NCBI GenBank assembly: GCA_965113315.1
Contig: OZ220363.1
Length of the DNA: 64,000 nt
Source: Podarcis vaucheri
Lineage: Eukaryota
Strand: one strand, 5' to 3'
The translations under genes and the position numbers were made by a program. Under the pieces are notes generated by a model that saw nothing but the letters and a program-made list of their open reading frames with translations, was not told where the DNA came from and searched no databases. Position 1 is the first letter of the stretch; every line of letters starts with the position of its first letter. Positions 17,715 through 19,704 of this stretch are shown piece by piece.

Positions 17715-18404
17715 GTATCGCAGGATTCCAAGCTCCCTCCACACAGAGCACCTGGTCCTCTTGCTAATGTCCAAACCTTTTTTTCTTTCTCTCTCTCTCT
17801 CCTATCTAGCTACGGGCATCTTTATTATTATTTTTGGCAGAGTTGGCTTGTTGGCTCCGAATGGCTTTCTGTGTATTTTGGGGGTGCAGATGGGGTCAAA
17901 CACAATCTCACAGTCAGTGATGTAGTGCAGATCTGTACTTTGGTGCAAGTCAGCGGGTCACTCTCATGGCATTGGGGGCTCTGCTTTTATCCACAGGACA
18001 CAAAGATCTGAATCTCAGGGCGGGGGGAGTATTTTGCATAGTAATTAGTGATCCAGCATCATAACATTCTACATGCCAGCTAATCCATGCTGAATTGCTT
18101 TGCTGATCAGCAACACTGCTGTGCGATTTAGCCTCCTTATTTTGCGAAACAGCATAATTTTAAGAAATAAGACCTGGATGCCGCAGAACAGAAAATGTGC
18201 ATTCTGTTTGCCAAATTCTCTGAAAACATTACTGACAGGATGTCCCAAACAGGAAGTTTCCACAGAGCATTGCAGTTTGATGAATCAACTGTTCTTTGGT
18301 ATCTGAGAACTCATCATAGAGCAAATGGGTTGTGCAGTACAAGTCTCTGCTTGTTCACTCAGAAGTTAAGTCACTCTCAGTTCAGTAAGGTGTTCTCCCA
18401 AGTA

Positions 18405-18573
18405 CCGTATTTTTTGCACCATAACACTCACTTTTTTCCTCCTAAAAAGTAAGGGGAAATGTCTGTGCGTGTTATGGAGGGAATGCCTACGGGTGGCATG
18501 CCTACAGGTTTTCCTCCTTTAAAAACTATGTGCGTGTTATGGTCTGGTGCGTGTTATAGAGTGAAAAATATGG
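18405..18573. mobile_element. Tc1/mariner-type MITE in the 8a-8b intron
   Basis: Inverted ends CCGTATTTTT.. / ..AAAAATATGG with TA on both sides (18403-18404, 18574-18575); internal repeats of GTGCGTGTTAT. Confidence 0.75.
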
Positions 18574-19704
18574 TAAGTGTGTAAGTAGGCCGAAGCTTGA
18601 AAGTGGATCCAGAAGTCATGTCATTTCCCTCAAAAGTAGACTAGATGCTAACCTTTCACTAGCTACAGCTTAAGATGGTGGTGGATAGAAGTTGTGGAGC
18701 ACCTACTTTTTTCTGGGATACTTGCAGAAAATGCTCAACCTGTTGGTTCTAGTTAGGGTACTCCTCATGTTCTTAAGCAATTGCGCATTATCAGATTATG
18801 CCTTAATTTTTAAGAGATCCTGAGCATGCACTCTTGCTTTGTGGGCCAGAAGGGTTCTGATAGAAAGTAGACTAATCAATACTGAAGCCATGGCTAAATG
18901 GACAGATATGCATGTCTGTGTCTTCTAAAGTGAAACAGGGAGCAGTATGGTAATACTTCAGATGTAAACTGCATTTCCAGAACTCCCCTGTGACATTCCA
19001 TTGACGTTCTGTCATTTTACTGCAACTGCACGATGCAGTTACCTTAAAATCCACTGTACCAGGCAAGGGGTTACTCTACATCTTTTTCCAATGCACACAG
19101 CTGAAGTTTAAAAAAGACATCCATTTTTAATCTGCAGTTTTATAAATGGAATATCTGCTAGCTGTGCCCACAGCACAAGGGGAAGAGCTGTATGCTCAGA
19201 AAACACACATGGGACAGCCCTAGTAAGATGTCAAGCACTGGCACTGCAAGAACAGATCTTCTCTGCCTTGCATCTGGGTTTTGTCATGCCTTTTAACTTC
19301 TATATAGTGTCTTCATCGAAATTTAGCTACTTTATTCCTGTGTGTAGAACAGGCACATGGCACTGGCTGTTTACTCCCCCAGATAAAGCTAGATTTGCCC
19401 ATCTGCAAGTGGGCTGAGGCTACTGACTGTGGAGTTGTGTCAAAGCAATGTGGACTAGGCTGGTTGCTTGGAAACCAAAGCTGAAATGGGGAGGTGGGAA
19501 CGAGTGCCACAGGACTCCACAAAGCCAACCCTGCCGGTCACGTTCTGATCCGAATTCCCAGCTCTCCGCATGGAAATCTGTTTGGCCTGTCCTGCAATGC
19601 ATGATGGGAAGTTTTCCCCTCTCTTACCACCCATGACTGTTTTATTTTATTCTGTGTGCTGCTTCTTACTTTATCCTTTCAACCTCTTCTCCTTCTTTGC
19701 ACAG

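What the first reader, a model, noticed from the sequence alone, without database searches (positions are those of the whole stretch)
17834..19537. Nested long-range RNA duplex bridging the intron between exons 8a and 8b
Seen: three antiparallel, properly nested complementary pairs about 1.5-1.7 kb apart. (1) GGCAGAGTTGGCTT 17836-17849 with AAGCCAACCCTGCC 19522-19535 (13/14, extendable by GU pairs and imperfectly to about 35 nt). (2) ACACAATCTCACAGTCAGT 17900-17918 with ACTGACTGTGGAGTTGTGT 19422-19440 (16 WC + 2 GU + 1 mismatch). (3) TGCAGAT 17926-17932 with ATCTGCA 19401-19407, which has a competing 10-bp partner TGCAGATGGG at 17885-17894. The arms are not recognisable transposons and the MITE at 18405 falls in the loop. 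Inference: the fold brings the 8a donor region next to the 8b branch/acceptor region and could enforce or tune mutually exclusive splicing, as long-range pairings do in FGFR2, DNM1 and ATE1. I know of no description of this for ACTN1.
Basis: partly seen in the sequence, partly recalled or inferred. Interest (0 to 1): 0.78.

Follow-up and report, generated by a model that had tools for sequence, protein, structure and literature searches.

The report
Complementary intron boxes between ACTN1 exons
Two short stretches in the intron between the two alternative copies of exon 8 of a lizard ACTN1 gene could pair as RNA, but the match is only modestly better than chance and nothing yet shows that it steers splicing.

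Summary
The gene is ACTN1-like. It has two 86-nt exon-8 copies, 8a (17629-17714) and 8b (19705-19790).

How unusual the match looks depends on the measure:
- Sum of two nested helices by complementarity score: reached by 0 of 600 shuffles and 1 of 385 same-geometry genomic controls.
- The same pair by energy: 13 of 500 and 7 of 385.

Only H2 (17900-17918 with 19422-19440) stands up. Each arm is the other's best partner within 19 kb, by a wide margin. Its predicted pair probability is 0.8-0.9. H1 has probability about 0 and an equally good partner elsewhere. H3 and the "competitor" are at chance level.

Complementarity is confined to short islands, and I found no sign of a transposon.

Conservation could be checked only for the left arm, through translated ORFs from other species, and that check was uninformative.

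Verdict: a real but unproven candidate, with roughly a one-in-three chance of being a functional long-range splicing helix.

The parts
17629..17714 (+). ACTN1 exon 8a (86 nt, AG...GT bounded; encodes [29 protein letters not shown])
   Evidence: Read. Neighbouring exons best match 'Alpha-actinin 1' among solved structures (54.9 bits, against 46 for actinin-2, 45 for actinin-3 and 41.8 for actinin-4).
19705..19790 (+). ACTN1 exon 8b (86 nt, strong pyrimidine tract upstream; encodes [29 protein letters not shown])
   Evidence: It has the same length and phase as 8a, so including both or neither shifts the reading frame.
17900..17918 (+). H2 left arm, 186-204 nt downstream of the 8a donor
   Evidence: 16 WC + 2 GU + 1 mismatch. 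Duplex energy -24.9 kcal/mol. Pair probability 0.81-0.83. Its best partner in 11000-30000 is H2R by 9.5 kcal/mol. Apart from itself, its only match with 3 or fewer mismatches in 64 kb is the right arm.
19422..19440 (+). H2 right arm, 265-283 nt upstream of the 8b acceptor
   Evidence: Its second-best partner is 20260-20299, downstream of 8b (-21.9), interrupted by a 13-nt bulge.
17836..17854 (+). H1 left arm
   Evidence: Duplex energy -24.7 kcal/mol on its own, but pair probability 0.000 in the folded intron. Forcing it costs +4.2 kcal/mol. An equally good partner lies at 23920-23959 (-28.2 against -28.1).
19517..19535 (+). H1 right arm
   Evidence: Its best partner is H1L at -27.1; the next is -25.3 at 24590-24629.
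17926..17932 (+). H3 left arm (7 nt)
   Evidence: Energy -8.1 kcal/mol. Pair probability 0.009.
19398..19407 (+). H3 right arm and competitor target (10 nt)
   Evidence: Its 10-nt partner at 17885-17894 has pair probability 0.000. That partner differs at three consecutive codons in the species of P0270.
17885..17894 (+). 'Competitor' box
   Evidence: (-17.3).
17779..17810 (+). Pyrimidine/(CT)n tract 65-95 nt downstream of exon 8a, a candidate protein-binding splicing element
   Evidence: CTCTCT at 17789-17795. It is retained in the intron-reading ORFs of other species.
18403..18575 (.). Small inverted-repeat (MITE-like) element inside the loop
   Evidence: I1: 29-nt arms, 79% complementary. 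It also contains an internal direct repeat.

Best explanation
The complementary boxes are real sequence, but most probably they have no dedicated role in splicing. They are short islands of complementarity that arose by chance in a 2-kb intron, and only one of them (H2, 19 bp) is a helix the pre-mRNA would be expected to form. On this reading the choice between exons 8a and 8b rests on other things. One is the reading frame: 86+86 nt or 0 nt shifts it, so double-inclusion and double-skipping products would carry premature stops. The other is protein factors binding the conserved exon-proximal intron, such as the pyrimidine/CT tract after 8a and the TGCATG before 8b. Shown here: the pairings exist, how significant they are, and their predicted stability. 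Inferred: that they have no function.
For: By energy the result is not rare. The best local duplex is reached by 57 of 500 shuffles and 18 of 385 genomic controls. The nested pair is reached by 13 of 500 and 7 of 385.

H1 has pair probability 0.000 and costs +4.2 kcal/mol to force. H3 has 0.009 and the competitor 0.000. H1L has an equally good partner 6 kb away.

The four non-Watson-Crick positions in H1 (14 nt) and H2 are all transition differences. Two give G-U on the sense RNA and two give A-C, so there is no bias towards sense-strand pairing (read).

In other species, H1L carries a change that removes a G-C pair (P0270: 17842 G to T) or loses one T (P0271), assuming the window's right arm is unchanged there. 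The competitor box is not kept.

The geometry would favour joining 8a to 8b, which is unproductive.
Against: By complementarity score the two nested helices are rare: 0 of 600 shuffles and 1 of 385 genomic controls reach them.

For each 19-mer, the only other match with 3 or fewer mismatches in 64 kb on either strand is its partner; 0.04-0.05 matches are expected by chance.

H2's arms are reciprocal best partners in 19 kb by 5.7-9.5 kcal/mol. H2 has probability 0.8-0.9 in two contexts.

End-to-end pairing of this intron exceeds that of all 3 control segments, though 3 is a small number.

The site, between two mutually exclusive exons, is where such helices are known to act.
Confidence: 0.5

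Rival explanations
1. H2, perhaps helped transiently by H1, is a functional long-range intronic helix. By pairing 17900-17918 with 19422-19440 it loops out about 1.5 kb. This shortens the effective distance between the 8a donor side and the 8b acceptor side from about 1950 nt to about 420 nt. It would thereby set the 8a:8b ratio. It might do so by bringing distal elements next to exon 8a, as the IAS2-ISAR stem of FGFR2 does (recalled, not from a call). Or it might change the order in which the flanking introns are removed.
For: (rarity by complementarity). (reciprocal best partners with a margin). (probability 0.8-0.9; only +0.8 kcal/mol above the minimum-energy fold); complementarity is confined to islands while the spacers are at shuffle level (134, 151 and 80 of 1000 shuffles), which a uniformly decaying inverted duplication would not give; the left arm is recognisable in ORFs from at least three other lineages, and the two visible H2L changes in P0270 (17908 T to C, 17910 A to G) would keep pairing with the window's right arm.
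Against: Significance by energy is only about 0.02-0.1. Fifteen of the 19 H2L positions tolerate a transition, so the two compatible changes say almost nothing. The flanks of H2L are about as conserved as H2L itself. No right-arm sequence from another species could be obtained, and no RNA data either. G-U pairs show no strand bias. The layout would promote 8a-8b joining. No paper found reports such a structure for any actinin.
Confidence: 0.33
2. The arms are the decayed terminal inverted repeats of an old cut-and-paste DNA transposon (for example hAT-like) of about 1.7 kb that inserted into this intron. The pairing potential would then be a by-product of its ends.
For: The blocks are collinear and nested, with unequal spacers (45 against 76 nt; 7 against 14 nt), as indels in an old inverted repeat would give. 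H1 read inward starts CAGAG / CAGGG, which fits the hAT end motif YARNG (motif recalled, not from a call). Earlier notes of this scan describe this genome as a lizard rich in hAT MITEs (unchecked leads). All four differences in the core helices are transitions, without strand bias.
Against: There is no target-site duplication: the 8 nt outside the arms match at 1 of 8 positions for either choice of boundary (read). Neither arm has another copy in the 64-kb window. No transposase-like domain turned up in the 10 of the 47 intron ORFs of 30 or more codons that were sent to Pfam. Similarity between the arms is limited to islands, and the spacers and outer flanks are at shuffle level.
Confidence: 0.12

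Closest known systems
FGFR2 IAS2-ISAR stem in the intron between exons IIIb and IIIc (recalled from the literature; no call)
   Same: Both arms lie inside the intron that separates two mutually exclusive exons. A stem of under 20 bp loops out several hundred to a thousand or more nucleotides.
   Different: In FGFR2 the stem was shown by mutation and compensation to bring control elements close to the upstream exon. Here nothing has been tested, no such element is identified next to the arms, and conservation is unknown.
ATE1 R1-R5 competing and ultra-long-range structures (PMC7797038; abstract and passages seen)
   Same: Intronic complementary boxes around a pair of mutually exclusive exons in a vertebrate gene.
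   Different: In ATE1 one box (R3) pairs alternately with R1 or R4, and losing this gives double-exon products. Here the only strong helix has no credible competitor: the competitor has probability 0.000. H2R's next partner, downstream of 8b, is 5.7 kcal/mol weaker and interrupted.
Docking-site/selector systems of insect Dscam, 14-3-3zeta and others, and the duplication model of Ivanov and Pervouchine (PMC6071210; abstract and passages)
   Same: Tandemly duplicated exons of equal length with complementary intronic sequences.
   Different: No second selector copy exists. Each arm has exactly one match in the window. The paper does not mention actinin (0 occurrences).
Exon 8A/8B mutually exclusive splicing of ACTN4 and ACTN2, reported to be regulated by QKI (bioRxiv 10.1101/2024.10.05.616792, passages; PMC7782589, listing only)
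   Same: The same exon pair in paralogous genes. The window's 8b carries the 8b-type residues (G, L, C).
   Different: Those reports concern mammalian ACTN2 and ACTN4 and regulation by proteins. No RNA structure is described, and I found nothing on an ACTN1 exon 8b.

Membership tests
Long-range intronic RNA helix regulating mutually exclusive exons (generic) | Complementary boxes in the introns next to the alternative exons, more than chance would give | tested here: inconclusive
   By complementarity score, 0 of 600 shuffles and 1 of 385 controls reach it. By energy, 13 of 500 and 7 of 385. The whole-region duplex is no better than shuffles.
Long-range intronic RNA helix regulating mutually exclusive exons (generic) | Both boxes conserved across species, with compensatory substitutions | tested here: inconclusive
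   Only the left arm could be seen, as translated ORFs from 3 clusters (5 proteins) of unnamed species. The right-arm ORF search was blank. Orthologous DNA could not be fetched.
Long-range intronic RNA helix regulating mutually exclusive exons (generic) | Disrupting the helix changes splicing and compensatory mutation restores it | not testable with these tools
   This needs minigenes, antisense oligos or in-cell structure probing.
Competing (docking/selector, ATE1-type) structures | One box pairs alternately with two partners, each pairing looping out one exon | tested here: not met
   H2 loops out the intron, not an exon. The proposed competitor has probability 0.000 and is not kept in P0270. 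No partner of comparable energy lies upstream of 8a. The partner downstream of 8b is -21.9 against -27.6 and is interrupted.
FGFR2 IAS2-ISAR-type approximating stem | Both arms inside the intron between the two exons, and the stem predicted to form | tested here: met
   The arms lie at 17900-17918 and 19422-19440, within intron 17715-19704. Pair probability is 0.81-0.83, a prediction only.
FGFR2 IAS2-ISAR-type approximating stem | The stem brings identified enhancer or silencer elements next to the regulated exon | tested here: inconclusive
   A motif scan found only single ACTAAT (18871) and TGCATG (18909, 19598) sites. None is adjacent to the arms and none was tested.
hAT-type DNA transposon ends | 8-bp target-site duplication flanking terminal inverted repeats | tested here: not met
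   1 of 8 positions match for either boundary choice (read).
hAT-type DNA transposon ends | Other copies of the family, or a transposase remnant inside | tested here: not met
   No other copy in the 64-kb window. No Pfam hit at or near a curated cut-off in the 10 of 47 intron ORFs sent. The rest of the genome could not be searched.

The most novel reading that the evidence does not exclude
H2 is a conserved squamate long-range helix inside the intron between ACTN1 exons 8a and 8b, and it sets the ratio of the two exons. That would be the first RNA-structure control element described for any alpha-actinin gene. It would also sit in ACTN1, the paralogue for which my literature searches found no exon-8 alternative described at all.
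Probability: 0.3. Interest if true: 0.6.

Novelty: new member of a known kind. Interest (0 to 1): 0.33.

Why it matters
If H2 is functional, ACTN1 would join the short list of vertebrate mutually exclusive exon pairs (FGFR2, ATE1, DNM1) whose choice depends on long-range RNA pairing. The exon-8 pair of the actinins is medically relevant in ACTN4 and ACTN2, so it would become a tractable model: a 19-bp helix about 1.5 kb across is easy to disrupt and restore. If H2 is not functional, the case is a useful calibration. A 19-bp, -25 kcal/mol, reciprocal-best helix at an ideal-looking place is reached by about 2-5% of same-geometry control pairs by energy. Such finds therefore need conservation before they are believed.

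Tried and rejected
Global RNAduplex on the two 285/355-nt regions. On long inputs it strings helices across the whole length, so it cannot see a local helix.

A low-threshold chain of many helices: not discriminating.

A transposase remnant in the loop. One intron ORF (18171-18449) contains a 'FDEST'-like string that reminded me of hAT transposases (recalled). Pfam gave nothing for it or for the 9 other intron ORFs I sent, out of 47 ORFs of 30 or more codons.

Rfam on the intron: one sub-threshold lncRNA match (19 bits against a gathering score of 50, E = 0.13). No known RNA family.

Orthologue hunt.
- An exon-10 peptide against the representative library gave many exon-plus-intron ORF fragments and one full-length fish actinin.
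- A search with that fish protein (P0050) returned 120 listed hits, all fish, all but three of them named alpha-actinin-4 or actinin alpha 4. This was useless for ACTN1.
- The right-arm ORF search was blank.

Pair-probability controls on 12 segments timed out. Three controls were completed.

Earlier-findings look-ups by sequence and by words were blank.

Lek et al. 2010, on actinin gene structure, is not held, so what it says about ACTN1 exon 8 is unseen. Supplements, for example the catalogue of conserved complementary regions of PMC8052449 (seen only as a listing and abstract), are closed and might list actinin pairs.
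Full report
CONTEXT. The window carries an alpha-actinin gene on the + strand. Translating the region gives these exons:
- exon 7, about 15818-15898;
- exon 8a, 17629-17714;
- exon 8b, 19705-19790;
- exon 9, about 25914-26006;
- exon 10, 27289-27519;
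- exon 11, about 29019-29168.

Searched one at a time, a calponin-homology exon scores best against 'Alpha-actinin 1' (54.9 bits; actinin-2 46, actinin-3 45, actinin-4 41.8). A rod exon scores best against chain 1sjj, 'actinin'. The ACTN1 label is therefore reasonable.

Exons 8a and 8b are both 86 nt, have AG/GT borders, and encode 28-residue peptides that differ at four positions. Including both or neither shifts the frame.

Earlier notes of this scan call the genome a lizard rich in hAT MITEs. These are unchecked leads.

OBSERVATION. The repeat finder independently lists H1 and H2 as the second and third longest inverted pairs in 17500-19900. Taken as isolated duplexes, the energies are:
- H2 -24.9;
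- H3 -8.1;
- the competitor -17.3.

IS IT MORE THAN CHANCE? The answer depends on the measure, so I give all of them.

It gives -143.9 kcal/mol against -145.8 +/- 7.9 for 500 dinucleotide shuffles, of which 290 are as low or lower. However, on long inputs the program strings helices along the whole length and is blind to a local helix.

(b) Gapped local pairing score: the best, 26.0, is reached by 19 of 300 shuffles. The second best, 23.0, is reached by 10 of 300.

(c) Best ungapped helix: reached by 5 of 400 shuffles and 4 of 385 same-geometry pairs slid along the window.

(d) Sum of two properly nested helices (47.5): reached by 0 of 600 shuffles and 1 of 385 genomic controls. I chose this statistic after seeing the data.

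(e) The same by energy: the best local duplex, -27.6, is reached by 57 of 500 shuffles and 18 of 385 controls. The nested pair, -51.6, is reached by 13 of 500 and 7 of 385.

(f) A chain of many weak helices is ordinary (148 of 400; 49 of 385).

(g) Each 19-mer has exactly one other match with 3 or fewer mismatches in the 64-kb window on either strand, and that match is its partner. Chance would give 0.04-0.05 matches.

Overall the signal is moderate: about 0.002 by length of complementarity and about 0.02-0.1 by energy.

WHICH HELICES WOULD FORM?
- H2 has mean pair probability 0.81.
- H1 has 0.000, H3 0.009 and the competitor 0.000.
- The single minimum-energy structure uses another partner for part of H2L (17910-17918 with 19362-19370). 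Forcing H2 costs only +0.8 kcal/mol, forcing H1 +4.2, and forcing all three +7.6.
- Extending the context to 20450 leaves H2 at 0.83.
- Pairing between the first 300 and last 360 nt of this intron (longest run of 12 pairs with p >= 0.5; 72 expected pairs) exceeds that of 3 of 3 control segments (runs of 4, 8 and 0; 8, 42 and 2 expected pairs). A larger control set timed out.

PARTNER RANKING. I scanned 11000-30000 in about 1,880 windows of 40 nt.
- H2L's best partner is H2R (-27.6); the next is -18.1.
- H2R's best partner is H2L (-27.6); the next is -21.9 at 20260-20299, downstream of 8b.
- H1L has an equally good partner at 23920-23959 (-28.2 against -28.1), with a 12-bp perfect core.
- H1R's margin is 1.8 kcal/mol.

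So only H2 is a specific, stable long-range helix. The three-tier nested fold and the competition scheme are not supported.

ORIGIN.
- Neither arm has another copy in the window (local blastn).
- I sent 10 of the 47 intron ORFs of 30 or more codons to Pfam. None had a hit near a curated cut-off.
- Rfam finds nothing above threshold.
- Read as transposon ends, H1 begins CAGAG / CAGGG, which fits the hAT end motif as I recall it. But the 8 nt outside the arms match at only 1 of 8 positions for either boundary.
- Aligned as DNA, the spacer between H1 and H2, the 60 nt outside H1 and the 60 nt inside H3 are no more alike than shuffles (134, 151 and 80 of 1000 shuffles reach the score).

Complementarity is thus confined to islands. 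That argues against a uniformly decaying inverted duplication and leaves chance or selection.

Within H1 (14 nt) and H2 the four non-Watson-Crick positions are all transition differences. Two give G-U on the sense RNA (17906, 17908) and two give A-C (17841, 17907). There is no bias towards the transcribed strand.

The ORF that runs from exon 8a into the intron is, however, present as a 'protein' in Logan-derived collections. A search with its intron-encoded part (17721-18008) found 3 clusters holding 5 proteins, from unnamed species. Local alignment of their intron-encoded tails shows the following.
- The first 80 nt or so of the intron, including the pyrimidine/CT tract, is well kept.
- H1L is recognisable in all three clusters. 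P0272-P0274 have 17839 A to G, which turns A-U into G-U. P0270 has 17841 A to C or T (at the existing mismatch) and 17842 G to T, which loses a G-C pair unless compensated. P0271 lacks one T at the 3' edge of the core.
- H2L is covered only by P0270. It has 17908 T to C (G-U becomes G-C) and 17910 A to G (A-U becomes G-U). Both are compatible with the window's right arm. But 15 of the 19 H2L positions tolerate a transition, so this carries almost no weight.
- In P0270 the competitor box differs at three consecutive codons.

These inferences see only amino-acid-changing differences, and they assume the right arm is unchanged. The right-arm ORF (19427-19633) found no relatives.

MECHANISM. If H2 forms, it loops out about 1.5 kb and brings the region 186 nt downstream of the 8a donor next to the region 265 nt upstream of the 8b acceptor. 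The likely branch site, a CTTAC about 35 nt upstream of 8b (read), is not covered. On its face this favours 8a-8b joining, which is out of frame. It does not loop out either exon, as the ATE1 pairings do (PMC7797038, abstract and passages). The nearest precedent is the FGFR2 IAS2-ISAR stem (recalled), whose role is to bring control elements together. Here no such element is identified: there are single ACTAAT and TGCATG sites, none adjacent to the arms.

LITERATURE. Searches for actinin exon 8 with mutually exclusive splicing, RNA structure or secondary structure found the following.
- ACTN4 and ACTN2 exon 8A/8B are described as mutually exclusive, and QKI is named as a regulator of ACTN2 (bioRxiv 10.1101/2024.10.05.616792, passages).
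- Hatje et al. (PMC5740500, passages) name ACTN4 among the genes with mutually exclusive exons. They report a docking-site case only for CD55.
- Ivanov and Pervouchine (PMC6071210, abstract and passages) do not mention actinin.
- A review of the family (PMC4550062, passages) mentions splicing of exon 19 and of the actin-binding domain, but no exon 8.

I found no description of an ACTN1 exon 8b or of an RNA structure at any actinin exon-8 pair. Lek et al. 2010 is not held and supplements are closed, so this absence is provisional.

VERDICT. The evidence for function is location plus moderate statistical rarity. Conservation of the right arm, covariation and RNA data are all missing, and the proposed competition scheme fails. 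My probabilities are:
- about 0.5 that the boxes are fortuitous;
- about 0.33 that H2 is a functional splicing helix;
- about 0.12 that they are relics of transposon ends.

If functional, it would be a new member of a known kind.

Noticed in passing
window 17592-18008 (+): A 139-codon stop-free frame runs from just upstream of exon 8a through it and about 290 nt into the intron. Orthologous versions are filed as 'proteins' of 106-118 aa in Logan-derived collections (P0270-P0274). Frame shifts among them trace to length changes in the (CT)n tract. They are spurious proteins, but they give a translated view of intron DNA from other species.
   Followed up: yes
window 23939-23951 and 24606-24622: A perfect 13-nt inverted copy of TTTGGCAGAGTTG (the start of H1L) lies 6 kb downstream, in the intron between 8b and exon 9. 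An H1L-like direct copy (AGGGTTGGTTTTGT) lies at 24606-24622. No inverted-repeat element surrounds either. It may be a short recurrent motif or chance.
   Followed up: partly
window 18403-18575: A small inverted-repeat element (29-nt arms, 79% complementary) with an internal 50-57-nt direct repeat (18434-18483 and 18509-18565). It sits in the loop of the proposed fold.
   Followed up: partly
window 19598-19603, 18909-18914, 18871-18876, 17779-17810: Candidate protein-binding splicing motifs: TGCATG 102-107 nt upstream of exon 8b and another mid-intron, one ACTAAT (QKI-type core), and a long pyrimidine/CT tract just downstream of exon 8a that other species retain. The motif identities are recalled.
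   Followed up: partly
window about 26640-26700: A long trinucleotide microsatellite that reads as poly-Asn in one frame and poly-Ile in another, in the intron after exon 9.
   Followed up: no
protein P0185: A full-length fish alpha-actinin-4-like protein (94% identical to P0050) is named 'troponin I, fast skeletal muscle [Sarotherodon galilaeus]' by its source. This is probably an annotation slip in the public record.
   Followed up: no
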